IMG/VR virus record: IMGVR_UViG_3300032236_001613
Span: 62,001 to 126,000 of that record
Length of the DNA: 64,000 nt
Reading direction: 5' to 3' (one strand)
The position numbers and the translations under genes are program-made. This document shows positions 2,211 through 19,230 of the stretch, one piece after another (position 1 is the stretch's first letter; each line of letters starts with the position of its first letter). The notes beneath the pieces are model-generated. The model was not told the origin of the DNA and did no database searches. It saw only the letters and a list, made by a program, of their open reading frames with translations.

Positions 2211-2269
2211 ATCTAGCTCCTTAGTTAGTAAGCCGTTATTATACTGGAGTTTTACCAGAATGTCAAATA

Positions 2270-2430
2270 GACCCGGGCTAACTCTAGACAATTACATTGC
2301 CGAAAGTTTGCTATCTTGTCCAACCCCCGGGCAGCTGGACTCAACAGGGTTATGTACTCATTTCGTAATGCAGAGCAGCGGCTACCAAAACCCTGCTAAC
2401 ACCTTGCCCGGCTCTGTTTTGTCATTACCC
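2270..2430 (-). ncRNA. Candidate structured ncRNA with pseudoknot
   Basis: ORF-free unit between two promoters; nested stems GTAATG/CATTAC and CAGAGC/GCTCTG; loop CAGGGTT can pair with downstream AACCCTG. Confidence 0.45.
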
Positions 2431-2458
2431 GTACATTATAGCAGGTTTTACCAGAATG

Positions 2459-3001
2459 TCAAGCCCGATCTACAGGTTGCCAAATACACTGATCCCAAGT
2501 GGATACTTTGATGTGGTCTTGACTGTCCGTATCGGATTGTGCTAGAAATAGCTCCTCGTATTCGGCCGGATTGTAGGCTATTAGATTGTCTACTTCCATG
2601 CCAAACGGAACGTCGCTTTCTTGATCCTGAAACACCCAACGTCCGGGTTCAATTTCACGCATAGCGAACCGTTCACGAGCTTCTTCGTCAAGTCCTACTA
2701 CACGTAGGCAATGACAGGGCTTGCCGTTTGTAGAGTTGTATAGTGCTTCACTAGTGATCACGTAATAATAGTTAGATCCACTATCTTCCATAGGCTTACG
2801 CTCGCGTACTCGATCGCCGACCTTAAATGGGCTAGGGATCTGTCTGTTCTTTCGAGCAGTAGCAGCCAATTCATCCATTTCTTTTATAAATTCCTTCAAC
2901 TTATCCGTATGCTCTTGTTCTTTTTTTGTAGACTTGATTAACTGGTTGATCAACCAGTATACGATTAATACTCCAATGATACATTGTACGATCATGACCA
3001 T
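2459..3001 (-). CDS. Membrane-anchored hypothetical protein
   Basis: N-terminal TM, FKVGDRVR motif, C-terminal WDQCIWQP shared with 12988..13353. Confidence 0.75.
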   Translation of the reverse strand: MVMIVQCIIGVLIVYWLINQLIKSTKKEQEHTDKLKEFIKEMDELAATARKNRQIPSPFKVGDRVRERKPMEDSGSNYYYVITSEALYNSTNGKPCHCLRVVGLDEEARERFAMREIEPGRWVFQDQESDVPFGMEVDNLIAYNPAEYEELFLAQSDTDSQDHIKVSTWDQCIWQPVDRA

Positions 3002-3004
3002 GGT

Positions 3005-3373
3005 TTATACTCCTCCAAACCAGCTAGTATACCAAGACTTTTTGGGTTTATACTGTTCTTGCTGTTTAGCTTCGCGTGCTATATACTCTTGTTCCTTATA
3101 GGCGGCCAGTTCTCGACGAGCGTCACGGCCATTTTCGATAGCTTGCTCCAAATCTCGTCGGTTTTGATATGCCCGATGATGTAGGTGATCAATTTCTTCG
3201 GCAGCTTCTCTTATTTGTCGTTTGTAGTCTGCTAACAAGGCAGCGGAACGTGCAGTTTCATCTTTAAGTTCTTGGATGTGCAGGCGCTGTAATTCCACAA
3301 TGGTGGTGCTATCTGCCAACATAGTGGCCAATTGGTCTTTGTCCAAATTAAGCAGATCGGGTTTGCTCAACAT
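3005..3373 (-). CDS. Coiled-coil protein
   Basis: Heptad-like helix, aromatic C-terminus KKSWYTSWFGGV; AGGAG RBS. Confidence 0.75.
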   Translation of the reverse strand: MLSKPDLLNLDKDQLATMLADSTTIVELQRLHIQELKDETARSAALLADYKRQIREAAEEIDHLHHRAYQNRRDLEQAIENGRDARRELAAYKEQEYIAREAKQQEQYKPKKSWYTSWFGGV

Positions 3374-3376
3374 TGT

Positions 3377-3574
3377 TTACTCCTTTTCTTTAAACTCGGG
3401 CATATGCTGAGACCAATCATATGTACCTACTTCATGATCCTCAGTCGGTTCTGGCAGTTGGAGTTTCAAAGCTTTGATCTCATCTTTAAGAGCACGGTTC
3501 TTGGCACGCAGGCCTGCTACAGTTTTCTCCAGCTGCTCACTGTACTCTTCGTAACTAAATTTGGGTCGAGACAT
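3377..3574 (-). CDS. Small coiled-coil protein
   Basis: RBS; directly downstream of promoter 3606-3634. Confidence 0.75.
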   Translation of the reverse strand: MSRPKFSYEEYSEQLEKTVAGLRAKNRALKDEIKALKLQLPEPTEDHEVGTYDWSQHMPEFKEKE

Positions 3575-3636
3575 TTCTGTTGCTCCTTACTGTCTAAGTG
3601 CGTATATTATACTAAGGTTTTACCGAAAGGTCAAGT

Positions 3637-3906
3637 CTATTTTTCAGTTTTGATTGCCTTAGCCACCATAGCTTCAATTTCTTTAACCACAGCAGCCAGT
3701 ATTGAACGGTAATATAATGATAGATTGTGTGCTATAACCCACACGATAGCCAATGTCCCGTAGAAGATCTTAGGTGGTTCGTGCCATAGTAAGGCACCTA
3801 GTGAGGTCCATGCAGCAATAGCGATAGCGAGCCGCTGTAGCAGCTCGCTTCGGCTAATGTTAGTAGTTACTCGAACTTCACTCACCATCAAACCCGCTTC
3901 ATGCAA
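3637..3906 (-). CDS. Small membrane protein
   Basis: Two hydrophobic segments; true start may be downstream of the annotated one. Confidence 0.55.
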   Translation of the reverse strand: MHEAGLMVSEVRVTTNISRSELLQRLAIAIAAWTSLGALLWHEPPKIFYGTLAIVWVIAHNLSLYYRSILAAVVKEIEAMVAKAIKTEK

Positions 3907-4727
3907 GTAATTTCAGCGAAGTTCGTCCAACTGTCCGGAAAGGCTACCTTCAAGTCTGCAATCTTAATCACAGCACGACATGACAGCTCCAACATACGCT
4001 CGCTATTATCATGAATGAAGTCAAGAATTGCTTTCTTTTCTTCTTCTTCGAAGCTGTACTTCTGCAGCATACCTGATTCAGTAACGTGACGCAGCCAGAT
4101 CAGCTTTTCACGATCGGTATCCATCTGTAGGTCAATGTAGTGGCAACGCGACTCAATCGCCTTCAAGTGGTTACGGAGTTTCTTAGAGCGCACGAAATCA
4201 AACTTCAAGTTGGTAATGAAGATTGCGCCACCCAAGAACTCAAAGCGATCTGGAATACCTTCACGTCGTAGCAAGCGACTGTCCTTGTTCCATGAAATGA
4301 AACGACGTTCGCTACTGTCAAGAGCGCCTTTAAGAGTGTTCAAGCTCTCTTCTTCTTCAAGTACAGTATCACAGTCGTCAAAGCCGATCACGTTCTTTTC
4401 TTCGCGGAACTCAAAGAGTTTAGCATATAGACCAATGCTAGATGCTGTACCTTTGACAATCTCATAGCGTGGCTTGCGACCGGCCAGTAGATTAAACAGA
4501 TCATCCTTAGCCAGGATTTCGCCTACGCCGTGGCTCTTGCCTACGCCAGCAGGACCTGATACAATAAGAGCACGAACGTGGCCTTGCTTAACGGCGCGGG
4601 TTACGTCGTGGAATACCTTAAAACGATTTTGCAAGCGGGTAAGAATCTGTGCATCAGTTTCTTTAGCAACAGACTTAGCAACGTCGGCAATACGATCCTG
4701 ATCCAATTCAATGGTGCTTTTGGTCAT
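3888..4727 (-). CDS. Phage P-loop (AAA-type) ATPase
   Basis: Walker A GPAGVGKS, Walker B IGFDDCD, sensor-like IFITN, ESRC arginine-finger region. Confidence 0.85.
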   Translation of the reverse strand: MTKSTIELDQDRIADVAKSVAKETDAQILTRLQNRFKVFHDVTRAVKQGHVRALIVSGPAGVGKSHGVGEILAKDDLFNLLAGRKPRYEIVKGTASSIGLYAKLFEFREEKNVIGFDDCDTVLEEEESLNTLKGALDSSERRFISWNKDSRLLRREGIPDRFEFLGGAIFITNLKFDFVRSKKLRNHLKAIESRCHYIDLQMDTDREKLIWLRHVTESGMLQKYSFEEEEKKAILDFIHDNSERMLELSCRAVIKIADLKVAFPDSWTNFAEITCMKRV

Positions 4728-4800
4728 TTAAGGTCCTTAAAAAGTAGAATTAATTACGCATCAACAGGTATATTATACTGCAAAGACCCTAATGGGTCAA

Positions 4801-5082
4801 TTAAGACTTAGTATCTTTGAGTACTCGTTTAATCATCTTCTGAAGCATTTGGTTGTTCGACTCGGAATCTTCTAGTTCGGCAGTCAAACGGGCGACCTGA
4901 GCAGTCAAACGCTCAACTTCGATCTTTTGGCGCTCTAGATCGTTCTGTAACTGCTGCTGTTGGGTTCGCGCATTCTGGGCGTCTAGTTTATATGCGTCAC
5001 GGCTTTTGATAGCTAGGGCTGCTAGCTCCATAAGCGGAGTGTCTGCAGTAGGTACAGGGTTATTGGCGGGTTCTAGTTTCAT
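4801..5082 (-). CDS. Coiled-coil protein
   Basis: Heptad pattern; AAGGA RBS; upstream promoter. Confidence 0.7.
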   Translation of the reverse strand: MKLEPANNPVPTADTPLMELAALAIKSRDAYKLDAQNARTQQQQLQNDLERQKIEVERLTAQVARLTAELEDSESNNQMLQKMIKRVLKDTKS

Positions 5083-5158
5083 AGTATGGACATCCTTCTA
5101 GTGTAGTAATTATCCAGGTAGATAACTATACACTAGAAGTTTTGGATAGTCAACCAGA

Positions 5159-5365
5159 TTATTCTGCAAATTCTTGCTCTTGGTAGTAAGCCAAGAGTTC
5201 GCGTTGAATAGTAGGAATCATCTCACCATCGCTTTCAATAGTAAAGCGGATAGGTGCATGACGCCAACTCTGTGTACGCTGGAACTCAGCGAACAGTTTT
5301 CGATGTCGAGCATTAGTTACATCAAACAATTCGTAAGGACGCATATGCAGATTCAATCGGCTCAT
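5159..5365 (-). CDS. Hypothetical protein
   Basis: AAGGAG RBS, compact operon spacing. Confidence 0.7.
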   Translation of the reverse strand: MSRLNLHMRPYELFDVTNARHRKLFAEFQRTQSWRHAPIRFTIESDGEMIPTIQRELLAYYQEQEFAE

Positions 5366-5380
5366 GGTCGTTCTCCTTAG

Positions 5381-5662
5381 TTAGGCTGCAACGGATTCGG
5401 ATTTCTTCTGTGTCTTAGTGCGCCGGGCTAGGCCGTCTTCAAGAGCTGCACGGACCTCAGCACGCCCATCATCAAAGTCAATGCTGATCAAGTATTCGAT
5501 AGCAGCGATCTTAGTCATGGGTTCGGGCAATTCGATCATATCAATGCAGTCATGATCAGTTTTGGCCAAAACCTTAACGCGAGCTGCATCGGTAGCAAAC
5601 CTGGTTTTGAACTGGCCTTTCAAACGGCTAACGCCGGCGTGTGTAAAAAGTTTATCAGTCAT
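5381..5662 (-). CDS. Hypothetical protein
   Basis: GAGGAG RBS; promoter ~5691-5720. Confidence 0.75.
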   Translation of the reverse strand: MTDKLFTHAGVSRLKGQFKTRFATDAARVKVLAKTDHDCIDMIELPEPMTKIAAIEYLISIDFDDGRAEVRAALEDGLARRTKTQKKSESVAA

Positions 5663-5726
5663 TTTGTCAACTCCTCTGTCTGTGTGCGTGTATTATACGA
5701 AACACAGACAGAGTTGTCAACCATTT

Positions 5727-6011
5727 TTAGTTCAAGCGTGGTGGTTCAGGATCGTATTCATCTTCGGTAGCGTACTGGTCTTCTGGATCGTAAGGCATAG
5801 TAGTCTCCTCTGTATCAGTGTCGTTATCAGTGTCAATCTCTTCCTCGTAGAATTCTCTAGCGGAATCGAGTTCGTCCTCAAAGTCGTCATCGCAGTAGTG
5901 CATAATATCGGCCAAAAGATCTGCAGGGCAAGTCCAAGTGGTGCCGTCGTTGCTAGCCAGCAGATCACGGATACGCTGCACAGCCTGTTGGTGTAGGGTC
6001 AAAGTAGTCAT
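5727..6011 (-). CDS. Acidic hypothetical protein
   Basis: Start moved to ATG 6011 (AAGGAG RBS); D/E-rich tail. Confidence 0.7.
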   Translation of the reverse strand: MTTLTLHQQAVQRIRDLLASNDGTTWTCPADLLADIMHYCDDDFEDELDSAREFYEEEIDTDNDTDTEETTMPYDPEDQYATEDEYDPEPPRLN

Positions 6012-6067
6012 TGTCCGTGCTCCTTTTGTTAAGTGTATATTATACAATCAACTAGGTATTGAGTCAA

Positions 6068-6424
6068 CTATTCGTCATTGTCGCATATTTCGCAAGGTTC
6101 CCAAGGTAATGCTCCGTGTGTGCAAGGTTTAGGGTCAGATTTCTTGGGAAGTGGAAGGTTCTTTAAAGGAGTAGTGCTGAATTCAGCAGATCGAACTACT
6201 CTTTTTAGTTCGTTGTCCCGAACTCTTTTATGAATGGGCTTTTCTTTTGCTGGGGTATCTCTTTCTGGAGGTTTTGAGTTCCTCAGTGTTTGTATCAAAC
6301 TATCTGTGTGAGCTACAGCAGATTGTGCTATCTTTATAGGATCCAATTTTTCGTTTGCTATGTTAGCCAACATTCCTTGCATGGCCATAGCCGCGATTTG
6401 CTCTCGTTTAGTTAAGTGCTTCAT
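6068..6424 (-). CDS. Hypothetical protein
   Basis: LTKRE.IAAMAMQG.LA motif common in small phage proteins; C-terminal CxH..CxxC. Confidence 0.7.
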   Translation of the reverse strand: MKHLTKREQIAAMAMQGMLANIANEKLDPIKIAQSAVAHTDSLIQTLRNSKPPERDTPAKEKPIHKRVRDNELKRVVRSAEFSTTPLKNLPLPKKSDPKPCTHGALPWEPCEICDNDE

Positions 6425-6471
6425 CTCTATATACCTTTGATGATACAGTATACAGAGATTCTAACCTATTG

Positions 6472-6672
6472 TCAATCGGGTTTTTTGAGCCAAAACTCCG
6501 CATCGTGTGCTATGCATTCTAGTGTGCCTGCGCCCGGGTAGTGGCGTAGAATGTGCATAGCACGTTCGCGCAAGTGTCGAGGGACTCTGGGTGTGGCTTT
6601 TGGGTTTAAGAGTTCTACTAAGAAGCGTTCTGCTGCTAGTAGAGCGCGATATCGTTCATCGGGTAGGGTCAT
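6472..6672 (-). CDS. Small conserved phage protein (BPSL0761-like)
   Basis: MTLPDERYRAL...PRVPRHLRERA..ILRHYP pattern recalled from that family. Confidence 0.6.
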   Translation of the reverse strand: MTLPDERYRALLAAERFLVELLNPKATPRVPRHLRERAMHILRHYPGAGTLECIAHDAEFWLKKPD

Positions 6673-6675
6673 TTA

Positions 6676-7305
6676 TTAATCCTCTGTATCAAGTCCGGAT
6701 AATTCTCTCATTCGTCTTGTATTAAAAAATGCAATCATTTCACCTAATTTAGCAGGCAAAGATTCGGACAAGACAAATCTATAGTTTTTGAAAGATACTT
6801 CGTTTCCAAAATATTGATTCATTTCGTCTGCATTTTTAAATGTAACGCGACTCTGTCCAGGACTGTGTATATCATAGACAGAAACATAATGTCCTTGATT
6901 GAATAATCTTTTCCAAATAGCAAACCCTTCATCACTTAACTGGTCGTCGCTGATAATGCATACTGGATAGTGAGTATCTTTGAGTACAGCATTATACAAG
7001 TTACTAGCGTAAGGAGGATGCCCGCTGTAATTAGGATCTTTGCCTACTACGTTTACCAAAAGGTTTTGTGGTTTTTTGGAAAATTCTATAGCTAGAAATA
7101 TATGTGTTTCTGTACCATACCAGTAGTAAATTGTACTTTCTAATTCAATTTTGAACAAGTCTTTAGATAACTTTTTTGGGTGTATTCCAGAAGATAATAG
7201 TTCTTTCACGTTTTGAGAAATTATAGGGTACATATCGCCTATATTATTTCTTTTGGGCATCTCTGTCAACCATGACTGGTTGAAATCAGTTCTACTCGTA
7301 GTCAT
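6676..7305 (-). CDS. AT-rich hypothetical protein, possibly virion-associated
   Basis: 209-aa ORF, markedly AT-richer than neighbours; N-terminal ..WLTE. Confidence 0.75.
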   Translation of the reverse strand: MTTSRTDFNQSWLTEMPKRNNIGDMYPIISQNVKELLSSGIHPKKLSKDLFKIELESTIYYWYGTETHIFLAIEFSKKPQNLLVNVVGKDPNYSGHPPYASNLYNAVLKDTHYPVCIISDDQLSDEGFAIWKRLFNQGHYVSVYDIHSPGQSRVTFKNADEMNQYFGNEVSFKNYRFVLSESLPAKLGEMIAFFNTRRMRELSGLDTED

Positions 7306-7308
7306 TCT

Positions 7309-7491
7309 TCAGCCCAAATCCGTTTTATAGCGAATGTGTACAGCAAAATCATAGGCTGCTTCAGGAGTCAAGCCTTTGGCTACAGCCCACCCAAGAGTCA
7401 AACTAAACCAATCTTGTGAACTGTCTGTATCGATTTCTGATGCTCTATCAGAGCATTCGGTTTTGAACAGTTCGATCAATTGTTCGTTCAT
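7309..7491 (-). CDS. Hypothetical protein (MNE- start family)
   Basis: Stop/start overlap with neighbours. Confidence 0.7.
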   Translation of the reverse strand: MNEQLIELFKTECSDRASEIDTDSSQDWFSLTLGWAVAKGLTPEAAYDFAVHIRYKTDLG

Positions 7492-7697
7492 TATTCAACT
7501 CCGAAATGATGCTTCAAAATACTACCACGGCTAACAAATGGATGATCAGCATCCTTGTCCATAATATAAGCACATTCCTTGACAATCAACTGGGCGAAAT
7601 TTTTAATAAAAACTTCTTCCAAACTGTTGGCAAAATCAAATCCTGGCAGAGGTTTATATCCAGCCTGTTCAGCAAGTTCTCTAATTCGCTCGTTCAT
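7491..7697 (-). CDS. MNERI-family small protein
   Basis: MNERIRELAEQAG..FAQLIVKEC..KHHFGVE. Confidence 0.8.
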   Translation of the reverse strand: MNERIRELAEQAGYKPLPGFDFANSLEEVFIKNFAQLIVKECAYIMDKDADHPFVSRGSILKHHFGVE

Positions 7698-7975
7698 TCT
7701 TCAATTCCGAAATGTTTTAGGATCTCGTCTCGAAGTTCACCGTTGCGAAATTCGGTAGCAAAGTCGTCCACCAAATGCACATAAAGATACTGCATAGCCT
7801 GTTCGGATTTGGGCAGTTTCAGAAATTTCTTGATACGCCGCCGTTCTTCTTTACTATATTCCTTAAGGTGATCCTTATGCACATAAAAGCCATCTGGGTC
7901 GTAATAGTCAAATTCAAATTCCGTGGCAAGATTGTGACAGCGACTTTCCATGCTTTCAACAATATATTCGTTCAT
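7694..7975 (-). CDS. Small protein sharing MNE..HFG.E ends with its neighbours
   Basis: Starts MNEY, ends LKHFGIEE; ATGA overlaps. Confidence 0.75.
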   Translation of the reverse strand: MNEYIVESMESRCHNLATEFEFDYYDPDGFYVHKDHLKEYSKEERRRIKKFLKLPKSEQAMQYLYVHLVDDFATEFRNGELRDEILKHFGIEE

Positions 7976-8178
7976 TCTTTAACTCCAAAATAACGCTTCA
8001 AACGAACAGGATACTCACTTGCGGGAAAACGATGGTCGACAAAATCCTGTATAGTCTTAGCACATTCCATAACAATCAACTCTGCGAACTTTTCAATAGC
8101 CTCTTGATCCCAAGCATCAGGAGTACCGTCGCAATACAAACCTGCTTCCTCAGCGAGAGTGTGAATACGTTCGTTCAT
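7972..8178 (-). CDS. MNERI-family small protein
   Basis: MNERIHTLAEEAG..FAELIVMEC..RYFGVKE. Confidence 0.8.
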   Translation of the reverse strand: MNERIHTLAEEAGLYCDGTPDAWDQEAIEKFAELIVMECAKTIQDFVDHRFPASEYPVRLKRYFGVKE

Positions 8179-8390
8179 TATTCAAAGACCTTAACAACTT
8201 CTTTATGCACCCGCTTGTCTGTCTGTAGGTATTCAACCCAGTTTTCAGCATCTGCGAGGTCGTGAAATTTACCATCTCGCTTAGTAGGATGCCAGATGTT
8301 AATCCAAAACAAGCCTAAACACTTGCTCTGTATCGCATACTGTGGGCGTCCGTAGTAGGCGCCGCTATGCTTAACAATACGGTATTTCAT
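8178..8390 (-). CDS. Hypothetical protein
   Basis: MKYRIV..Y.IQ.K.L.FW pattern; coupled overlaps. Confidence 0.7.
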   Translation of the reverse strand: MKYRIVKHSGAYYGRPQYAIQSKCLGLFWINIWHPTKRDGKFHDLADAENWVEYLQTDKRVHKEVVKVFE

Positions 8391-12029: not shown

Positions 12030-12083
12030 AGCCAACTCCTTACTGTTACTGTAGGAATAGTATACTATGGTTTTACCAAAAGG

Positions 12084-12527
12084 TCAAGCCAATTCTTTCT
12101 TCTTGGCTCGGACTCGGGCTGTTCCCTTCTTAGTATGACGCACCATGCGAGCGTAACGATGCTGCCCCATCAAGATTTGGATACGACCTTCAAACCCGTC
12201 CTTAATAGGAACGCTCCCAGTTTCAATTTTGAAGTTGTTCTTGTCAAACCACTGAAGCCACTCGTAAAGTTCGGCTTCGGCTTCCTCACCGCGGCTCAAT
12301 ACTGCCACGCAGGGATGCTTATGATAGGCGTTCTCCGGACACCAAACGACGCCATTCTTATCTGCTCGTTTGTAGTCCTCGTCGTACCATGCATAGTCTG
12401 GATAATTACCGTCGACTACAATGCCCACGCAATGCCGCCCGATGCCTACTTCGCCTTCGAGATCCAGTTGACAGTTATTCTTAGCAGCCCAAACCGCCAT
12501 CCAAGTAATCTTTTCATCGCGTGTCAT
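12084..12527 (-). CDS. Hypothetical protein
   Basis: Own promoter and AGGAG RBS. Confidence 0.75.
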   Translation of the reverse strand: MTRDEKITWMAVWAAKNNCQLDLEGEVGIGRHCVGIVVDGNYPDYAWYDEDYKRADKNGVVWCPENAYHKHPCVAVLSRGEEAEAELYEWLQWFDKNNFKIETGSVPIKDGFEGRIQILMGQHRYARMVRHTKKGTARVRAKKKELA

Positions 12528-12581
12528 TGTATTACTCCTTGCTCTAACTATGAGTATATTATAACAGGTTTTACCAAATGG

Positions 12582-12923
12582 TCAAACACAATCTGAGACA
12601 AATTCTGTGTCAGGTGCAACCAGCGTTTCTACAAACCAAGTACCGCCTGTGCCCTGAGTATGCTCTTGTGCGTAGTCTTCTGCAGACTCTACGCTAGGAA
12701 ACGGGCCCGCAAAGTTAAATCCCTTGACAGGATCTCCATGTACTACAACAAGATCCACATTATCATCTTGTCCATCAACATTGGGCGTCCGCATCATGAC
12801 TACAAACCATGCAGCGGCTGTGCAGTACTCCCCGCCATAGTCGTAGGCTGCTTCTTCTTGATCAAAAGGCCCGATAAACTCGAAGCCGCTAGAAAGGTCA
12901 CCAAATAATATAACAAACTGCAT
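12582..12923 (-). CDS. Protein with internal duplication
   Basis: Two copies of V...GD...GF.F.GPF...E.A.DY..E...  WFV. Confidence 0.8.
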   Translation of the reverse strand: MQFVILFGDLSSGFEFIGPFDQEEAAYDYGGEYCTAAAWFVVMMRTPNVDGQDDNVDLVVVHGDPVKGFNFAGPFPSVESAEDYAQEHTQGTGGTWFVETLVAPDTEFVSDCV

Positions 12924-12987
12924 AGACAGTCTCCTTTTGCTATGAGTATATTATAACAGGTTTTACCAAAAAGTCAAGACCTGTGTT

Positions 12988-13353
12988 CTAAAGAGTCAAA
13001 CCTTCGACACCATTTTTCCGAGGTTGCCAGATACACTGGCTCCACTGAACTAGTTCTCGGTCATTCCTGTCATCGTAGGGTTCTAACCATGCCACAGGCA
13101 CCGCGTAAGACATAGGCCTGCCACTATGAGTGGAAGTTCCCCGATCAATCTGCCTACCGTCGGCCAGCACAGCAGTGAGGTCGTGCACGTCACAGGTGAT
13201 GCGTTGCCCGCCTGTTGTCTCTACAGTGGCGTGCCTGGCAGGTGCTCGCACCACAGCGTATTGCAGTTCATCGGGCGGTGGCGTGCCCTGCTGGTCAATC
13301 TGAATCACACGGACCCGTTGTCCAACTTTAAATCCCGTACTCATATTAAACAT
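12988..13353 (-). CDS. Hypothetical protein (FKVGQRV / WSQCIWQP)
   Basis: Own promoter and RBS; motifs shared with 2459..3001. Confidence 0.7.
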   Translation of the reverse strand: MFNMSTGFKVGQRVRVIQIDQQGTPPPDELQYAVVRAPARHATVETTGGQRITCDVHDLTAVLADGRQIDRGTSTHSGRPMSYAVPVAWLEPYDDRNDRELVQWSQCIWQPRKNGVEGLTL

Positions 13354-13405
13354 TTTCTCCTTGCTAGTGTCTGTGTATTATAGCAGGTTTTACCAAGAAG
13401 TCAAG

Positions 13406-13640
13406 TGCTTCTCTCTGCTGGCGGTGTTTGTCATCTCACCACAAACAATTATGTGGTATCCGCATCCCAACACAGAGAGACTTTCGTGTGCCAACGCCCG
13501 TTAGGTTAGACGGCAGTATTGCTACTGGAGACCATTGACAGTCATTCTCGCGAATGATATGTTGTTCTCAAACCACCCGTGGTTGTCACACCACTTCATC
13601 ATGCGGGTCACATTAGTGGCTGACTAAGCCACGTGGTCTT
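13406..13640 (-). ncRNA. Candidate multi-hairpin structured ncRNA
   Basis: ORF-free; GNRA-capped stems TCATTC-GCGA-GAATGA and CAGTA-GCAA-TACTG; 8-bp TCTCTCTG/CAGAGAGA enclosing a 7-bp stem. Confidence 0.6.
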
Positions 13641-13643
13641 TAA

Positions 13644-13928
13644 TTAACTAAAAATGTCAGCCAAAATCTGGTCAATTTCATGCTGACGTGCACGTTCGCC
13701 ATGAACGCGATCCATGAACTCTGACATCATGCCCGGACGATTGTGGACATAGTCCAGCTGGCCGTATGCCGAAATGTCAAAGTAACGGAAGGATGGTGCA
13801 CCAGGATAGTACTTAATCCACTGACCGCGCTGCAGGACCAAACGACCGTCCTGGATAGCACGCCGAGTGGCCGGATCCGAAAGAACCGGAGTAGGAAGAA
13901 ACTGACGACCCTTACGATTGATAACCAT
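13644..13928 (-). CDS. Hypothetical protein
   Basis: Promoter 13978-14006 and AAGGAG RBS. Confidence 0.7.
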   Translation of the reverse strand: MVINRKGRQFLPTPVLSDPATRRAIQDGRLVLQRGQWIKYYPGAPSFRYFDISAYGQLDYVHNRPGMMSEFMDRVHGERARQHEIDQILADIFS

Positions 13929-14002
13929 ATTAATTGCTCCTTACAAAAAAGTGTTTAAACTCTAACTCAACAGAACTATTATACTAAACTTTTACCAAAA
14001 GG

Positions 14003-14164
14003 TCAATAAAGACTTGAAAGATTTTCACGTTGCCAAACCCAGAGATCCTGTATCACATGAAACGCAGGTCCAACAGGGCCAATAGCGACGCCAGTGCGGC
14101 TATCCACTTCAAAAGTCTGCCAACCGCCTACAACACTACGGCAAGTGTATTCTTTGACAAACAT
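14003..14164 (-). CDS. Small hypothetical protein (53 aa)
   Basis: Manual translation MFVKEYTCRSVVGGWQTFEVDSRTG...; AAGGAG RBS. Confidence 0.65.
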   Translation of the reverse strand: MFVKEYTCRSVVGGWQTFEVDSRTGVAIGPVGPAFHVIQDLWVWQRENLSSLY

Positions 14165-14173
14165 GTCTGCTCC

Positions 14174-14326
14174 TTAGAGTTTGATCAGCACATCAGGATA
14201 GGCAGTAGCAAATGTTCGTGTTCGTTCACCACGCGGATCATAGTAATAATCCACTCGTTGACAATAGCGTTTGGCCAGCCACTTCACCACGAACACAGGC
14301 AGTATCACAGTCCATTTTGCTAACAT
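14174..14326 (-). CDS. Small hypothetical protein (50 aa)
   Basis: Manual translation MLAKWTVILPVFVVKWLAKRYC...; AAGGAG RBS, promoter 14353-14380. Confidence 0.65.
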   Translation of the reverse strand: MLAKWTVILPVFVVKWLAKRYCQRVDYYYDPRGERTRTFATAYPDVLIKL

Positions 14327-14376
14327 TGTTTGCTCCTTACTAGTATCTATATAGTATAGCAGGTTTTACCAAAAGG

Positions 14377-14595
14377 TCAACCAACCAAACCCTCATCCAT
14401 CATCTCCAAGAGTTTGATGGTGTATTCTCGCTCGTGACTGTAAGTCCTTGACTCGTTAGCCCATTCCTCACCATAGACAGCGAGGAACTCGTTGTAGATC
14501 TCTCGAAGAGAGATTTGAGGAAAACGGAATGCAACCTCATGGTACAGTTGGCCTTGGTTGACCATCTCGCGCATCTCGATGTTGATCTCTTTCAT
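14377..14595 (-). CDS. Hypothetical protein
   Basis: Own promoter 14620-14647. Confidence 0.7.
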   Translation of the reverse strand: MKEINIEMREMVNQGQLYHEVAFRFPQISLREIYNEFLAVYGEEWANESRTYSHEREYTIKLLEMMDEGLVG

Positions 14596-14649
14596 CTTAC
14601 CCTCGTTTGCTATGAATATATTATAGCAGGTTTTACCAAAAGGTCAAAC

Positions 14650-14844
14650 TTAGAATTGGCGAACGCAGAGTGACTGAATATGCGGAGCAGGCGCATAAAA
14701 ACTATTTTGTTCCTGCTGATGCAGCCATCCAGTACCTGCAGCTAGACAGGCCTCTTTGCTTTCAAAAGGCCCAATCTGGGTTATAGCTGAGCCGCCGCGA
14801 TGGTCACTCGCCGCAATAGTAAGAATCAATAACCAACCTGCCAT
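14650..14844 (-). CDS. Small exported/membrane protein
   Basis: WLLIL..., F.SKEAC..A pattern; GGAG RBS. Confidence 0.7.
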   Translation of the reverse strand: MAGWLLILTIAASDHRGGSAITQIGPFESKEACLAAGTGWLHQQEQNSFYAPAPHIQSLCVRQF

Positions 14845-14845
14845 A

Positions 14846-15046
14846 TTATTTCTCCTTCTTCAATTTAGGAAAGTGATAGGCTAAATTTTCCCAGAGACCT
14901 AGAACTATTGCTGCGGGTATAAACAGCACCATTAGACGGCTCCTGTCTAGGCCTAGCCCTAGTAATGGCATAGTCGTTAGTATCACAATACCTGCTATGA
15001 TCAGAGCCACAACTACGCTCAGTAAAATGACCAATAGAGTCACCAT
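14846..15046 (-). CDS. Small two-TM membrane protein
   Basis: Hydrophobic; 1-nt spacing with neighbours. Confidence 0.7.
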   Translation of the reverse strand: MVTLLVILLSVVVALIIAGIVILTTMPLLGLGLDRSRLMVLFIPAAIVLGLWENLAYHFPKLKKEK

Positions 15047-15047
15047 A

Positions 15048-15251
15048 TTACTTGTCCTTCTTGAAAAGATCCACTACAGACATCAAAATGCTCTTCAGTA
15101 AGAACACTACAAAGCCTACAACCGCGTATGGCAGACAGATGATAAAGCCTATAACAGGCACAGCCATCACAGCAGCTCCTAATGAGAACACGGCAGCGAA
15201 TGCTACTATGCACCATAAAATCAACAGAGTTGAGTAACTAACGGTAATCAT
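15048..15251 (-). CDS. Small two-TM membrane protein
   Basis: Hydrophobic; 1-nt spacing. Confidence 0.7.
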   Translation of the reverse strand: MITVSYSTLLILWCIVAFAAVFSLGAAVMAVPVIGFIICLPYAVVGFVVFLLKSILMSVVDLFKKDK

Positions 15252-15252
15252 A

Positions 15253-15471
15253 TCACTTGACCTTTTTTGGAAAAATCTTTTTCCAAAGCATAATGGGTGA
15301 TGTGATCAGTAACACGCCCAGCATCAATATACCACCCGGAATTAGAATAATCCACAGTATGGGCCTCTGCTTGGTGCCGAAATGTGCGCCAAACTTCATA
15401 GAAACCATGCCGGCTATTCCCAATGCCAAAAACAATACAACCAGCAAGGTTATGAGACTGATAGTAATCAT
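15253..15471 (-). CDS. Small two-TM membrane protein
   Basis: Hydrophobic; AAGGAG RBS. Confidence 0.7.
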   Translation of the reverse strand: MITISLITLLVVLFLALGIAGMVSMKFGAHFGTKQRPILWIILIPGGILMLGVLLITSPIMLWKKIFPKKVK

Positions 15472-15480
15472 AACATCTCC

Positions 15481-15774
15481 TTAAAACGGAATATCGTCGT
15501 CAAGCTGACGAGTAGATGGCCGAGGAGGACCTACGAACTCACTCTTAGCAACAGCCCGATCAACCCAGTATTGTACCTCCTCTTCGGTCATATAACAGGT
15601 TTCTTCAGGATGTGGCTGCGGCTTACCACGATAGTGCGGGTTCTCAATCCACACGTCGTAATCAGTAAGAATCCATTGACTATCCTTGTAACGATCATAA
15701 TCACCTACATTGTAGGCATATTCACGCATGGCTTCAGCTGGAGTGGCTACGCGATCTTCTTCATCATAAAACAT
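15481..15774 (-). CDS. Protein ending in SSB-tail-like DDDIPF
   Basis: C-terminus LDDDIPF; own promoter and RBS. Confidence 0.8.
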   Translation of the reverse strand: MFYDEEDRVATPAEAMREYAYNVGDYDRYKDSQWILTDYDVWIENPHYRGKPQPHPEETCYMTEEEVQYWVDRAVAKSEFVGPPRPSTRQLDDDIPF

Positions 15775-15828
15775 TGAAGACTCCTTACTGTTACTGTAGG
15801 AATAGTATACTACGGTTTTACCAAAAGG

Positions 15829-16095
15829 TCAAGATTTTTTGTATAGAGAGTGAAGGGCTTCGTGCTGCTCCAAAGCTTTCAACTGCTTCTTCACCTGAGT
15901 GAGATAGAGGTAGCGGCGATTGACTTCGGATCGGGCCAACTCACCATCGCAGGTCAAGTTCTCAGGGCTAAGGTCAGACTCTAGATGACCTGCCAGATGC
16001 CGACGGTGTTGCGGATCGTTGAGGTCCAGATCGGCCTCCTTGAAGAAGCGATTGATCTGATTGATGTGATCTAGATATTCAGTGAGTTCTTCCAT
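15829..16095 (-). CDS. Conserved phage protein
   Basis: LSPENLTCDGEL motif; own promoter and RBS. Confidence 0.75.
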   Translation of the reverse strand: MEELTEYLDHINQINRFFKEADLDLNDPQHRRHLAGHLESDLSPENLTCDGELARSEVNRRYLYLTQVKKQLKALEQHEALHSLYKKS

Positions 16096-16152
16096 AGGTT
16101 GCTCCTTGCTAGTGAGTCAGTATTATACTAAGGTTTTACCAAAAGGTCAACA

Positions 16153-16359
16153 TCAATTCACAAGATTTACACGCTCTAAACGGTAAAAGAAATCTTGCTT
16201 AGGGTCAACAATTCCAAACTCCACAAAGTATTCCGAACCTGTAAGTTCGTCATGGCAATGGAACCCGTCATCTTGTGTGTAGTCAATACGAAACACATCA
16301 CCATTCTGTATAAAGAATACTGAGTTCTGTGCAATGTCATGCAATTCGTTATGGTCCAT
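16153..16359 (-). CDS. Hypothetical protein
   Basis: Stop/start overlap. Confidence 0.7.
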   Translation of the reverse strand: MDHNELHDIAQNSVFFIQNGDVFRIDYTQDDGFHCHDELTGSEYFVEFGIVDPKQDFFYRLERVNLVN

Positions 16360-16691
16360 TATGCCTTCTCCTCAGTTTGAGCTTTGAGCTTGGCTAACTT
16401 TTTTTCGAGATTACTGATTTCTTTCAAGCGGGCCTTTTCCTTTCGGATAGCCTCTTTCTTCTTTTCTTCCTCTTCTCGAATTTTACGTTCAGCATCCTGC
16501 TTCTGATGTTCATTCCACCAGTCCAGATGCTGTTTCTTAGTAACTCCGCACTCTGTCCAATCAATGCGATCCACAATAGTAGGATCTGCTCGCATAGCAG
16601 CACAAACTACGGCTTCGAACTGTTTGACACGTTTCTCAAGGTTTCGTGAATTACGTTCTCGATCATAACTATCATCTACATAGCAAGGCAT
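16359..16691 (-). CDS. Hypothetical protein with charged coiled coil
   Basis: MPC start, WW.EH..QD motif; AAGGAG RBS. Confidence 0.75.
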   Translation of the reverse strand: MPCYVDDSYDRERNSRNLEKRVKQFEAVVCAAMRADPTIVDRIDWTECGVTKKQHLDWWNEHQKQDAERKIREEEEKKKEAIRKEKARLKEISNLEKKLAKLKAQTEEKA

Positions 16692-16703
16692 ATCATATTC
16701 TCC

Positions 16704-17057
16704 TTAGTCTGAACTGTCGTAGGCGTTGATCTGACCGCAATGGATACACTTATACTGGTCATAGCCGCGGCCTAGATTCTGTAAGAACTTCCACTCATGC
16801 CCAGAACACTTAGCCGCAGTCTCCTTAGAGACATAACCGTGACCACCACAGTGATCACAGATTTTACGGAAATGACTGTAACGATGACGATTCTCTGGAG
16901 TATCAGGCTTGCCATGCAGGTTGTAGCTGTTGATAGAAAGATTCCACCCACCATGACCACGGCAGCGAGGACACTCTACAGTATAATTAAGCCAAGGCTC
17001 CTTGCGTGGATGATCCAAGAATGCATCTGGATGATCTGGCGTAAGAAAGTCTGACAT
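16704..17057 (-). CDS. Zinc-finger protein (DnaJ-type CxxCxGxG)
   Basis: CPRCRGHG, CDHCGGHG, CIHCG. Confidence 0.8.
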   Translation of the reverse strand: MSDFLTPDHPDAFLDHPRKEPWLNYTVECPRCRGHGGWNLSINSYNLHGKPDTPENRHRYSHFRKICDHCGGHGYVSKETAAKCSGHEWKFLQNLGRGYDQYKCIHCGQINAYDSSD

Positions 17058-17110
17058 ATGTTACTCCTTGCTCTAACTATGAAACTATTATAGCAGGTTT
17101 TACCAAAAGG

Positions 17111-17257
17111 TCAACCGTTATCTGGAACTTCCTTGAAGCCAAATGCCGTAAGGTCATCAAGGTTAATGACTTCCCGGAGATAGTTCAGTAGCATCAGCTC
17201 GGCTGCATCGAGATCTTCTGCATCAAACTCTGTTTCGAAATTGATTTTGAATTTCAT
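17111..17257 (-). CDS. Small acidic protein (48 aa)
   Basis: Manual translation MKFKINFETEFDAEDLDAAELMLLNYLREVINLDDL...; stop lies in the next -35 box. Confidence 0.55.
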   Translation of the reverse strand: MKFKINFETEFDAEDLDAAELMLLNYLREVINLDDLTAFGFKEVPDNG

Positions 17258-17462
17258 AGGCTTCCTCACGGCTCATTTCATTATTGATACGATTGAAAAT
17301 GCAGTAGTCAGACACTCCTGCATCATACCCGGTCTTATAAGCATGACCACATTTGGCGTCGTGCCCGTTAACGGCATCGTAATACTGCTGATCTACACGA
17401 CCTTCTTCACGCCCGTCGAAGTAACCACGAGCATAGGCATAATAGGTGCTATCGTAAGACAT
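17223..17462 (-). CDS. Hypothetical protein
   Basis: YARGYFDGR..YKTGYDAG repeat-like motif; AAGGAG RBS. Confidence 0.7.
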   Translation of the reverse strand: MSYDSTYYAYARGYFDGREEGRVDQQYYDAVNGHDAKCGHAYKTGYDAGVSDYCIFNRINNEMSREEAYEIQNQFRNRV

Positions 17463-17480
17463 TGTGTTGCTCCTTTAATC

Positions 17481-17690
17481 TTATACCAATTTCATATAGT
17501 TAAATTCGGTCTTATTGCAGCGGCTGCAGATTCTGGTTTGATATATCACAAAACTGTAGACTCGACCCTTTCTATGCCAGGTTTCATTAAGAGACATGTT
17601 TGTCTCTTCATGATCCTCTCCATTGAGAAACTCACGAACGTAGTATTCGTTTAGATTAGCCCACTGACTCCACTTGTGTATAATGCACAT
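17481..17690 (-). CDS. Hypothetical protein
   Basis: MCIIHKWSQW..RICSRCNK pattern. Confidence 0.65.
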   Translation of the reverse strand: MCIIHKWSQWANLNEYYVREFLNGEDHEETNMSLNETWHRKGRVYSFVIYQTRICSRCNKTEFNYMKLV

Positions 17691-17747
17691 ATTACTTCAG
17701 CTCCTTGCTCTAACTGTGAATACATTATAGCAGGTTTTACCAAAAAG

Positions 17748-17990
17748 TCAACCTTCTTCGTCTTCTTCCTCGTCGTCTTCGGGCCAATCGTCGTCCTCAT
17801 CGTCTTCCCATTCTCCGTTACAATCTTCTCCCCAGGGTTCGTCGATGACGAGATCTAGGTTCTCGTCAAAAACTTCTTGGTTGACAATGGATACGTTGAC
17901 ATGGTTGTGTTCATAGTTTGCCAAAGCTTCAACATCAGTTTCTGCTTCAACTTCATACTGATGGGTGATTCGAACGTAGAATTTGGGCAT
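17748..17990 (-). CDS. Acidic hypothetical protein
   Basis: Own promoter and RBS; poly-D/E tail. Confidence 0.75.
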   Translation of the reverse strand: MPKFYVRITHQYEVEAETDVEALANYEHNHVNVSIVNQEVFDENLDLVIDEPWGEDCNGEWEDDEDDDWPEDDEEEDEEG

Positions 17991-18041
17991 CTCAATCTCC
18001 TTGTTATTGAAATAGAATTATACTAAGGTTTTACCAAAAGG

Positions 18042-18227
18042 TCAACCAGCTGGCGTTATATTCACAACAGTGAATAGTCCTCCCGGATAGGCTTCGAGAG
18101 CAACTGAAGGAAATAAATCAACGGCAGCATTTAGATCCGCTGCTTCAATCGTTAGACTTTCTAGTCTCCCAGGGTGAGGGAACTCAGGAGGATCTGATAC
18201 TTGAAAAGTTATAGTCCATAGACTCAT
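18042..18227 (-). CDS. Hypothetical protein
   Basis: GGAG RBS, overlap. Confidence 0.6.
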   Translation of the reverse strand: MSLWTITFQVSDPPEFPHPGRLESLTIEAADLNAAVDLFPSVALEAYPGGLFTVVNITPAG

Positions 18228-19225: not shown

Positions 19226-19230
19226 ATAGT

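What the first reader, a model, noticed from the sequence alone, without database searches (positions are those of the whole stretch)
2238..18045. Promoter-anchored gene-cassette array: upstream stop codons are the TGA inside the next promoter's -35 box
Seen: 17 near-identical promoters punctuate the arm. In 12 genes the TGA stop is exactly the TGA of the next TTGAC hexamer (stops at 2459, 6472, 9030, 10816, 12084, 12582, 14003, 14377, 15829, 17111, 17748, 18042). Unrelated genes also share promoter+UTR+RBS blocks: 12035-12088 vs 15780-15833 are 53/54 identical, and 12532-12585, 17061-17114 and 17701-17751 are closely related. Known: repeated early promoters mark recombination-prone accessory regions in T4-like phages, and integrons capture ORFs at fixed sites. 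Inference: genes are gained or shuffled by crossover at or near the -35 box, so each incoming ORF gets a stop codon and expression signals. This would be an integron-like plug-in array built from promoters.
Basis: partly seen in the sequence, partly recalled or inferred. Interest (0 to 1): 0.85.

Follow-up and report, generated by a model that had tools for sequence, protein, structure and literature searches.

The report
Hyper-compact, shuffled early-gene array of jumbo phage
In the early-gene arm of an uncultivated 328-kb freshwater phage, genes are packed so tightly that each stop codon sits inside the next gene's promoter, ribosome-binding site or start codon, and whole genes are swapped at these junctions; this is a tighter variant of the gene shuffling already known in T4-type phages.

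Summary
The minus strand of window 337-19750 carries about 29 consensus sigma-70 promoters. Seventeen share the spacer motif GGTAAAAC. All 12 listed ORFs end at the TGA inside the next TTGAC, and a 13th does so at 1821.

- **General compaction.** The stop/-35 overlap is one case of a wider rule. Stops are also embedded in the next Shine-Dalgarno site (TAAGGAG) or start codon (ATGA, TAATG).
- **Family-wide pattern.** Across about 80 related contigs, roughly a quarter of promoter-proximal genes stop in the -35 TGA. An equal share read deeper into the promoter.
- **Junction-dependent stops.** Orthologues of one gene use whichever embedded stop fits the signal that follows.
- **Breakpoints.** Against relatives 90-97% identical in aligned segments, 20 of 25 indel or replacement breakpoints lie at gene junctions (p = 5e-8). 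They split 10:10 between promoter and promoterless junctions, falling at the -35 edge, spacer, -10, Shine-Dalgarno site and start or stop codons.
- **Not an integron.** I found no integrase, attC-like repeats, stem-loops or terminators at the promoter blocks.

The best reading is a hyperplastic, host-RNA-polymerase-transcribed early region. Genes turn over by short-homology recombination at repeated expression signals, as with T4-type PeSLs but without the stem-loop and AT-rich parts. Extreme compaction accounts for the shared TGA.

The parts
337..19750 (-). Early-gene array: about 57 small, mostly ORFan genes, all on the minus strand, from the head promoters (19722-19750, 19544-19572) down to tRNA-Lys (240-314). 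It continues past the left end of the window.
   Evidence: ORF lists and gene calls; promoters; few Pfam or PHROG matches
18017..18045 (-). GGTAAAAC-class promoter; TGA 18042-18044 in its -35 is the stop of gene 18042..18227
17724..17751 (-). GGTAAAAC-class promoter; the -35 TGA 17748-17750 stops gene 17748..17990
17087..17114 (-). GGTAAAAC-class promoter; the -35 TGA 17111-17113 stops gene 17111..17257, which is conserved in L097
16122..16150 (-). GGTAAAAC-class promoter; the upstream gene 16153..16359 has its own TGA 2 nt before TTGAC, in frame with the -35 TGA
15804..15832 (-). GGTAAAAC-class promoter; the -35 TGA 15829-15831 stops gene 15829..16095. Part of block 15780-15833, which is 53/54 identical to 12035-12088.
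14620..14647 (-). GGTAAAAC-class promoter; the TAA of gene 14650..14844 lies 2 nt upstream, in frame with the -35 TGA
14353..14380 (-). GGTAAAAC-class promoter; the -35 TGA 14377-14379 stops gene 14377..14595. L097 carries two copies of this promoter flanking an extra ORF.
   Evidence: junctions 9, 10
13978..14006 (-). GGTAAAAC-class promoter; the -35 TGA 14003-14005 stops gene 14003..14164
13377..13404 (-). GGTAAAAC-class promoter preceded by conserved non-coding DNA (13405-13643). Homology with L097 breaks inside its spacer, at 13390.
   Evidence: (junction 11)
12950..12977 (-). GGTAAAAC-class promoter; the TAG of gene 12988..13353 lies 10 nt upstream
12558..12585 (-). GGTAAAAC-class promoter; the -35 TGA 12582-12584 stops gene 12582..12923. 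Homology with L097 starts exactly at the first T of TTGAC.
   Evidence: junction 12
12059..12087 (-). GGTAAAAC-class promoter; the -35 TGA 12084-12086 stops gene 12084..12527. Part of block 12035-12088.
10791..10819 (-). GGTAAAAC-class promoter; the -35 TGA 10816-10818 stops the inserted gene 10816..11355. Its leader differs from that of L097 although the flanks are 94% identical.
   Evidence: (junction 14)
9006..9033 (-). GGTAAAAC-class promoter; the -35 TGA 9030-9032 stops gene 9030..9395
3606..3634 (-). GGTAAAAC-class promoter; the TAG of gene 3637..3906 lies 2 nt upstream, in frame with the -35 TGA
2435..2462 (-). GGTAAAAC-class promoter; the -35 TGA 2459-2461 stops gene 2459..3001. It drives a 162-nt ORF-less, structured transcript candidate (2267-2428).
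2238..2266 (-). GGTAAAAC-class promoter of gene 1821..2210; non-coding DNA lies upstream
6447..6475 (-). Generic consensus promoter; the -35 TGA 6472-6474 stops gene 6472..6672. In L098 homology ends right after this TTGAC.
6039..6067 (-). Generic promoter; the TAG of gene 6068..6424 abuts TTGAC. In L098 homology resumes at its -10, so cassette 6048-6470 is a promoter-to-promoter indel.
1796..1824 (-). Generic perfect promoter; the -35 TGA 1821-1823 stops gene 1821..2210.
   Evidence: breakpoint in the spacer against L019
10447..10475 (-). Generic promoter; the TGA of gene 10478..10759 lies 2 nt upstream, in frame
4772..4800 (-). Generic promoter of the conserved ATPase-like gene 3888..4727; the TAA of gene 4801..5082 abuts TTGAC
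5125..5153 (-). Generic promoter; here TAA lies 5 nt upstream, but at least 16 diverged orthologues of gene 5159..5365 end in a TGA inside a TTGA(C/T) motif
5692..5720 (-). Generic perfect promoter; the TAA of gene 5727..6011 lies 6 nt upstream
18491..18518 (-). Promoter with TTGATC as its -35; the TAA of gene 18522..18899 lies 3 nt upstream
10820..11382 (-). Insertion hot spot between the GP88-like gene and promoter 10791-10819. The window holds a 179-aa ORF, L097, L098 and L108 hold a roughly 75-aa membrane-like ORF, and L099 is empty. Both inserted ORFs stop in the -35 TGA.
   Evidence: (junctions 13, 14)
12550..12978 (-). Promoter-to-promoter cassette (promoter, gene 12582..12923, next promoter). 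It is found at 87% identity at a different place in L018 (7082-7510) and is replaced by other DNA in L097.
14858..15475 (-). Three small membrane-protein-like genes absent from L097. The indel is bounded on both sides by AAGGAGA, so it runs from one Shine-Dalgarno site to another with no promoter involved.
   Evidence: junctions 7, 8
17476..18015 (-). Two genes with an internal promoter, absent from L097. The breakpoints lie after the -10 of promoter 18017-18045 and at the AAGGAG of gene 17223..17462.
   Evidence: junctions 3, 4
15476..15483 (-). Example of a stop embedded in the next Shine-Dalgarno site (TAAGGAG). Others lie at about 16704, 14174 and 11385. Six ATGA and three TAATG stop/start overlaps also occur, for example at 8629, 8387, 7972, 7694 and 16359.

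Best explanation
This is the host-RNA-polymerase-transcribed early, hyperplastic arm of an uncultivated jumbo phage of about 328 kb (IMG/VR contig 3300032236_001613). About 29 consensus sigma-70 promoters drive one to six small, mostly ORFan genes each.

The arm has almost no spacer DNA. Each ORF ends in a stop codon that is part of the next expression signal: T-TGA-C of the -35, TAA-GGAG of the Shine-Dalgarno site, or A-TGA / TAA-TG at the next start codon. These promoters lack the AT-rich upstream element and the terminator hairpin found in T4-type promoter cassettes. The first fixed base after an ORF is therefore the -35, and TTGAC happens to contain TGA in the one frame that adds no residues to the protein. 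That is why the overlap is so frequent.

Genes are gained, lost and moved one ORF or one cassette at a time. I infer that this happens by short-homology recombination between the repeated signals, namely the 28-54-nt promoter-leader-SD blocks and the 7-8-nt AAGGAG sites, with selection keeping ORFs intact. When a crossover falls in the spacer or -10, the -35 and its TGA stay with the upstream ORF, while the -10, leader and SD go with the downstream ORF.

Shown: the anatomy, the statistics, the family-wide pattern and the breakpoint positions. Inferred: promoter activity, the recombination mechanism, and compaction as the cause of the overlap.
For: - Anatomy and statistics.
- General stop-in-next-signal rule: one search shows 13 stops in a -35, 4 in TAAGGAG, 6 in ATGA and 3 in TAATG, with the rest 0-10 nt away.
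- Junction-dependent stops: orthologues of gene 15829..16095 end in a -35 TGA, TAAGGAG, TAATG or TAAnATG according to what follows.
- Family-wide counts: of 521 promoter-proximal gene ends, 115 are in the -35 TGA and 128 lie deeper in the promoter. By homology cluster the classes are 56, 58, 66 and 58.
- Long-term stability: the -35-embedded stop of the gene 5159 family is kept in at least 16 diverged relatives.
- Turnover: ORFan content, shuffled order in L032, a relocated cassette, and 25 breakpoints against relatives 90-97% identical in aligned segments, of which 20 lie in junction zones covering 27% of the sequence (p = 5e-8).
- Breakpoints inside promoters that both partners share.
- SD-to-SD deletion bounded by AAGGAGA: junctions 7 and 8.
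- Block exchange: identical promoter-leader blocks at non-orthologous sites and a leader swapped between 94%-identical flanks.
- Precedent for promoter-mediated shuffling in T4-type phages: PMC2839356 and PMC4122927.
- Distant kinship: the array's ATPase-like protein has homologues in PA5oct (44%) and in T4-like phages (about 35%).
Against: - No transcription start or expression data exist, so the promoters are consensus predictions.
- Breakpoints at gene boundaries could result from random illegitimate recombination filtered by selection. I did not test microhomology against a simulated null.
- The 13:0 frame bias in this genome is stronger than the family-wide 115:128 split. Compaction alone explains that only if C-terminal extensions of 4 or more residues are selected against.
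- The 53/54-identical blocks are each 54/54 conserved in L097. Their identity may therefore reflect selection rather than recent exchange.
- The adjacency-conservation test was crude, because gene and promoter calls were automatic.
Confidence: 0.7

Rival explanations
1. The array is a promoter-built, integron-like plug-in system: crossovers occur specifically at or near the -35 box, and the -35 TGA is an adaptive device that gives any incoming ORF a stop codon and expression signals.
For: - Three homology blocks against L097 start exactly at or 1 nt before the first T of TTGAC (14380, 12585, 10820), and two end in or just after the -35 or spacer (13390, 6471).
- At the hot spot upstream of promoter 10791-10819, two unrelated inserted ORFs both stop at the -35 TGA. 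In L097 the upstream gene stops in a second TTGATC copy left of the insert.
- All 13 promoter-overlapping genes use the TGA frame.
Against: - Half of the junction breakpoints lie at promoterless junctions, at the Shine-Dalgarno site or at start or stop codons.
- Promoter junctions are no less conserved than others across the family.
- Stops are equally often embedded in the Shine-Dalgarno site or start codon, and family-wide many genes read past the -35.
- No integrase or attC-like repeats were found.
- Because all promoters share the consensus, homology ending at the -35 edge cannot locate the crossover there.
Confidence: 0.15
2. Compaction only. The repeated promoters play no part in recombination. 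Indels arise by random illegitimate recombination or replication slippage, selection keeps only those that respect ORF boundaries, and small deletions have trimmed every spacer until stops merged with the next signal.
For: - Equal use of promoter and promoterless junctions.
- The general stop-in-next-signal rule.
- A broad family-wide spread of stop positions from 60 nt upstream to 20 nt inside promoters, which looks like intermediate stages.
- Five intragenic breakpoints.
Against: - Breakpoints inside promoters where both partners keep a complete hybrid promoter.
- A deletion bounded by the direct repeat AAGGAGA.
- A duplicated promoter flanking an extra ORF in L097 (junctions 9 and 10).
- A cassette moved with both flanking promoters.
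- A leader block swapped between near-identical flanks.
- Experimental precedent for promoter-mediated exchange and mini-circles in T4-type phages (PMC2839356).
Confidence: 0.15

Closest known systems
PeSLs (promoter-early stem-loops), the mobile regulatory cassettes of T4-type phages (Arbiol et al. 2010, PMC2839356; Comeau et al. 2014, PMC4122927)
   Same: Both are strong sigma-70-type early promoters repeated many times in a hyperplastic region of small ORFans, ending in a Shine-Dalgarno site and start codon. In both, indels and replacements between close relatives are bounded by the repeats, and cassettes carry their own expression signals. The phage also shares an ATPase-like protein with T4-like and PA5oct-like phages.
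   Different: - There is no stem-loop or terminator in or next to the blocks.
[quoted passage not shown] The upstream ORF runs into the -35 instead of stopping about 8-17 nt before it, as in RB49.
- A different conserved spacer motif (GGTAAAAC) is present.
- Shine-Dalgarno sites and start or stop codons serve as joints as often as promoters do.
- Mini-circles were not tested.
Integron gene-cassette arrays
   Same: An array of small, mostly unknown-function ORFs, all in one orientation, with ORF-sized gain and loss at fixed junction types.
   Different: No IntI-type recombinase was found at the array head or in the window proteins scanned. There are no attC-like imperfect inverted repeats. Each unit has its own promoter rather than one common Pc.
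Overlapping stop/start translational coupling (ATGA, TAATG) in compact phage and bacterial operons
   Same: Both share nucleotides between the end of one gene and the signal for the next. The same array uses ATGA six times and TAATG three times.
   Different: Here the shared signal is often a transcriptional element, the -35 hexamer. One such case is annotated in RB49 (gene 59 / gene 32 early promoter). I did not find it described as a systematic feature, but I ran only one such literature search.
Morons of lambdoid phages (an inserted gene with its own promoter and terminator)
   Same: Accessory genes inserted between existing genes, each with its own promoter.
   Different: There are no flanking terminators. 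The insertions form a dense array in an early arm rather than being scattered through a late operon. This comparison rests on general knowledge and was not tested further.

Membership tests
PeSL (T4-type promoter-early stem-loop cassette) | Repeated strong sigma-70-like early promoter located in a hyperplastic region next to ORFans | tested here: met
   About 29 consensus promoters on one strand in 19 kb. Most neighbouring ORFs have no homologue or family match.
PeSL (T4-type promoter-early stem-loop cassette) | Stable stem-loop (terminator or attenuator) within or overlapping the promoter motif | tested here: not met
   Six blocks fold at only -2.6 to -4.7 kcal/mol, with z-scores of +0.65 to -1.17. 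None of the 22 terminator-like sites lies in a promoter block. RB49 promoters show the GGGGATC...GATCCCC hairpin.
PeSL (T4-type promoter-early stem-loop cassette) | [quoted passage not shown] | tested here: not met
   The sequence upstream of TTGAC is unrelated coding sequence. The stop lies in the -35 in 13 cases and 0-10 nt upstream in 10. RB49 stops lie about 8-17 nt upstream in A-rich DNA (PMC2839356 Fig. 2 legend).
PeSL (T4-type promoter-early stem-loop cassette) | Indels and replacements between close relatives bounded by the repeats | tested here: met
   Ten of 25 breakpoints against L097, L098, L099 and L108 fall in promoter junctions, including promoter-to-promoter indels 6048-6470 and 12586-13390. 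Ten others are at promoterless junctions.
PeSL (T4-type promoter-early stem-loop cassette) | Excised mini-circles carrying one chimeric repeat | not testable with these tools
   This needs reads or PCR from the source samples.
Integron | IntI tyrosine recombinase next to the array head | tested here: not met
   The ORFs flanking the array head (19772-22125) and the other window ORFs I scanned show no recombinase domain. Only part of the 64 kb window of a 328 kb genome was scanned.
Integron | attC-type imperfect inverted repeats bounding each cassette | tested here: not met
   Only one inverted repeat of 14 nt or more within 120 nt exists in 20 kb, and it is not at a junction.
Integron | Promoterless cassettes expressed from a common promoter | tested here: not met
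   A consensus promoter precedes about half of the genes.

The most novel reading that the evidence does not exclude
The junction grammar is itself adaptive. In this jumbo-phage family every ORF end is fused to a short universal signal (TTGAC, AAGGAG or ATG). Any ORF can then be cut and pasted by microhomology without a scar, always gaining a stop codon and expression signals. This would be a recombinase-independent gene-cassette system in which expression signals double as recombination joints. The conserved GGTAAAAC spacer could be a preferred crossover site or a regulator-binding site.
Probability: 0.2. Interest if true: 0.65.

Novelty: new variant of a known kind. Interest (0 to 1): 0.45.

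Why it matters
Hyperplastic early regions are where phages keep and exchange host-takeover and anti-defence genes, and how they turn over so fast without breaking expression is only partly understood. The ATPase-like gene of this array has at least 273 related stretches in IMG/VR, so the phage belongs to a large uncultivated jumbo-phage family. In that family, gene exchange happens at single-ORF resolution at promoters and ribosome-binding sites alike, without the stem-loop and AT-rich parts of T4 PeSLs. Stop codons are routinely shared with the -35 hexamer.

The practical consequences are as follows:
- Gene callers and promoter finders should expect ORF ends inside promoters.
- The promoter-leader blocks are ready-made markers for cassette boundaries in metagenomes.
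- The family offers many natural replicates for measuring recombination at short repeats.

Tried and rejected
- **Cultured relatives.** A nucleotide search of cultured phages found no relative, only a 76-nt match. Relatives came from IMG/VR and metagenome scans instead.
- **Adjacency conservation.** A test of about 1700 junctions showed no lower conservation at promoter junctions. Gene and promoter calls were automatic, and loci include regions outside the array, so I used it only as weak evidence.
- **Family-wide breakpoint mapping.** At 75% identity or more this mostly measured fading similarity, with a peak at the conserved -10. I redid it at 88% or more.
- **Integron reading.** Rejected: no integrase and no attC-like repeats.
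- **PeSL membership in the strict sense.** Rejected: no stem-loops.
- **Recoded TGA.** Rejected: long plus-strand ORFs of up to 2445 aa are uninterrupted under code 11, and ORFs ending at the -35 TGA are followed by an SD and ATG.
- **Non-coding stretches.** Rfam gave no family for the two non-coding stretches.
- **Literature.** One search for a described stop/-35 overlap found nothing specific; two earlier attempts were rejected for their syntax.
- **PA5oct neighbourhood.** The region around the PA5oct homologue is organised in longer operons and was not analysed further.

Full report
**What is there**

All genes between window 337 and about 19000 lie on the minus strand. A search for TTGAC-N18-TATAAT with up to one mismatch gives 24 matches, against 2.95 +/- 1.7 in shuffles; 20 are on the minus strand below 20 kb. 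Exactly 17 minus-strand promoters carry the spacer core GGTAAAA. Aligned on the -35, these 17 share TTGAC, then cttttGGTAAAACC, then TATAAT, a 15-25-nt leader, AAGGAG and ATG. The sequence upstream of TTGAC is unrelated coding DNA. About 12 further consensus promoters without the spacer motif lie on the same strand. The array therefore has about 29 predicted promoters for about 57 genes. Few of the proteins scanned match Pfam or PHROGs. The matches are an ATPase-like protein (3888..4727, phrog_1250), a GP88-like protein (11385..12029) and a zinc-finger-like protein.

**The observation**

Each of the 12 listed coordinates is the low end of a minus-strand ORF whose TGA is bases 2-4 of TTGAC. A 13th case lies at 1821-1823. 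The shortest ORF, 17111..17257, is 96% identical at protein level in relative L097 and also ends in the -35 there.

The blocks 12035-12088 and 15780-15833 are 53/54 identical. Identity starts 1 nt before TTGAC and ends right after AAGGAGT. The blocks at 12585, 17114 and 17751 form a second related group.

All 13 genes that run into a promoter use the TGA frame (p = 6e-7). Of 22 stops that lie within 13 nt of a -35, 18 are in that frame (p = 4e-6). Four of them are stops placed exactly 2 nt before TTGAC (3637, 10478, 14650, 16153).

**Origin and relatives**

The window is part of IMG/VR contig 3300032236_001613 (328,068 bp). Cultured phages hold no nucleotide relative. The ATPase-like protein has 273 related stretches in IMG/VR, several on contigs of 200-327 kb. 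Its nearest cultured homologues are Pseudomonas jumbo phage PA5oct (44%) and T4-like phages (about 35%). Metagenome contigs L097, L098, L099 and L108 are 90-97% identical to the array over most aligned segments.

**The stop/-35 overlap is a family trait and part of a wider rule**

I collected 617 distinct promoter contexts from the related loci. In 521 of them an upstream ORF ends nearby, and 115 of those stop at the -35 TGA. This is by far the most common single position. Another 128 stop deeper inside the promoter, with a second peak at a TGA in the spacer. Collapsed to homology clusters, the classes are 56 (in the -35), 58 (deeper), 66 (0-10 nt upstream) and 58 (11-27 nt upstream).

Inside the window, stops that are not in a -35 are often embedded in the next Shine-Dalgarno site (TAAGGAG, four cases) or in the next start codon (ATGA six times, TAATG three times). 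Otherwise they lie a few bases (mostly 1-18 nt) before the next start codon.

Orthologues of gene 15829..16095 end in a -35 TGA, in TAAGGAG, in TAATG or in TAAnATG, depending on what follows them. Orthologues of gene 5159..5365 end in a TGA inside a TTGA(C/T) motif in at least 16 diverged relatives, although the promoter scan recognised a full promoter at only 12 of them. The overlap can therefore be stable over long periods.

In RB49, the archetype of T4-type promoter cassettes, clear PeSL-type promoters mostly have a TAA about 8-17 nt upstream in A-rich DNA. Only one clear case has the stop in the -35 (gene 59 before the gene 32 promoter, which is annotated that way in GenBank). The overlap is therefore not a universal property of compact phages. 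It goes with promoters that have no AT-rich upstream element.

**Gene turnover**

Most array genes have no homologue in the loci fetched around the ATPase-like gene of about 80 relatives. In the 326-kb relative L032, the array between the same boundaries measures 13.4 kb instead of 19.2 kb. The shared segments are 67-91% identical and lie in a different order. The cassette 12550-12978 (promoter, gene, next promoter) occurs at 87% identity at another place in L018.

Against L097, L098, L099 and L108 I read 25 genuine breakpoints base by base:

| Position of breakpoint | Window coordinates |
|---|---|
| First T of TTGAC, or 1 nt before it | 14380, 12585, 10820 |
| In or just after the -35 or spacer | 13390, 6471 |
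| At the -10 | 18016, 6047 |
| At AAGGAG | 17475, 15476, 14857, 10162, 7511 |
| At start or stop codons | 16354, 14324, 11389, 10200 |
| Inside genes | 9261, 9149, 8655, 8061, 7603 |

Twenty of the 25 lie in junction zones that make up 27% of the sequence (p = 5e-8). They split 10:10 between promoter and promoterless junctions, and the array has 26 and 28 of those.

A family-wide set of high-identity breakpoints gives the same picture. The 5' ends fall 15 at promoter junctions and 14 at promoterless junctions, and the 3' ends 13 and 10. [quoted passage not shown]

At the hot spot before promoter 10791-10819 there are three states: empty (L099), a roughly 75-aa ORF (L097, L098, L108) and a 179-aa ORF (the window). 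Both inserted ORFs stop at the -35 TGA.

The two 53/54-identical blocks are each 54/54 conserved in L097. Selection on the whole block therefore contributes to their identity. The leader of promoter 10791-10819, however, has been swapped between flanks that are 94% identical.

**What it is not**

The promoter blocks do not fold into stem-loops. Terminator-like sites are not enriched (22 against 14.8 +/- 4.4), and none lies at a block. There are no recurrent inverted repeats. No recombinase domain appears at the array head or in the window proteins I scanned. TGA is a genuine stop codon here: long ORFs are uninterrupted under code 11, and an SD and ATG follow each embedded stop.

**Interpretation**

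The best-supported reading is a hyper-compact early arm transcribed by the host RNA polymerase. Its genes turn over by recombination at short repeated expression signals. The principle is the one described for PeSLs in T4-type phages (PMC2839356, PMC4122927). Here the stem-loop and AT-rich parts are missing, and ribosome-binding sites serve as joints as often as promoters do.

The shared TGA follows from compaction. TTGAC is the first fixed element after an ORF, and it offers a stop in the one frame that costs no extra residues. When a crossover falls in the spacer or -10, the -35 and its TGA travel with the upstream ORF.

The evidence does not support -35 specificity, an integron analogy, or a special role for the embedded stop. 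The evidence does not exclude that the uniform junction grammar itself helps scarless ORF exchange. I give that reading a probability of about 0.2.

**Limits**

Promoters are predicted by consensus only. Breakpoints inside a shared promoter cannot be placed more precisely than the promoter itself. I did not test microhomology against a simulated null. Related contigs are not phylogenetically independent, although collapsing to homology clusters gave the same proportions.

Noticed in passing
window 19204-19535 (-), intron 19308-19493: A tRNA-Leu(UAA)-like gene at the head of the array is split in its anticodon loop by a group I intron (Rfam RF00028, 64.3 bits). Relatives L097 (1917-2000) and L032 (4589-4672) carry an intron-less tRNA-Leu(taa) at the same place, after the equivalent promoter. 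I read the exon halves by eye only.
   Followed up: partly
window 2267-2428 (-): A 162-nt stretch without an ORF lies between two GGTAAAAC promoters and is driven by promoter 2435-2462. It folds at -58.3 kcal/mol with z = -3.0 and has no Rfam match. It is a candidate small RNA.
   Followed up: partly
window 13405-13643 (-): A non-coding stretch upstream of promoter 13377-13404 is conserved at 84% in L032 and lies within a 95%-identical segment in L097, but sits at a different array position in L032. Its fold is only weakly better than shuffles (z = -1.7).
   Followed up: partly
the 17 promoters listed in parts; related loci L018-L109: The spacer motif GGTAAAAC sits at a fixed distance (9-11 nt) after TTGAC. 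It occurs in 0-75% of promoters per related contig and in 95 of 611 overall. The family consensus also has GG directly before TTGAC. It may be a regulator-binding site or a promoter subclass.
   Followed up: partly
window 10150-10197 (-): After gene 10198..10398 there is a hairpin followed by a run of eight T that looks like an intrinsic terminator. I read it by eye, and the scan did not list it. L099 has a different hairpin plus T-run at the same place, followed by a 700-nt insert.
   Followed up: no
window 7309-8632 (-): A tandem run of small genes (60-93 aa) joined by ATGA or TAATG overlaps, with near-identical junction sequences. At least two are paralogues (7491..7697 and 7972..8178). Relatives differ by unequal exchanges within this run.
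   Followed up: partly
window 1-133 (-) and 10198..10398 (-): The gene cut by the left end of the window is a paralogue of gene 10198..10398 (window 4-64 is 85% identical to the equivalent of about 10273-10333). The array therefore continues beyond the window.
   Followed up: no
window 506-967: A 463-nt gap in the minus-strand genes holds a perfect plus-strand promoter (642-671, 12/12 matches) and further plus-strand promoter-like sites. In L018 the same gap holds extra cassettes. Its function is unknown.
   Followed up: no
L018 7474-7620: In this relative a roughly 40-aa ORF starts right after the -10 box with no Shine-Dalgarno site, so it may be a leaderless mRNA.
   Followed up: no
window 20950-22125, 24461-24871 (-), 27458-28012, 29014-30321, 30991-31512 (-): Beyond the array the phage encodes an NT5C-type deoxyribonucleotidase, a ClpS-like adaptor, an Fe/Mn superoxide dismutase, an ATP-dependent DNA ligase and an HNH endonuclease. 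ORFs of 1807, 2445 and 1361 aa follow at 46-63 kb.
   Followed up: no
L111 (RB49) 27004-27009: The GenBank annotation of RB49 places the stop of gene 59 inside the annotated -35 signal of the early promoter of gene 32. This is a single precedent for the overlap in a T4-type phage.
   Followed up: yes
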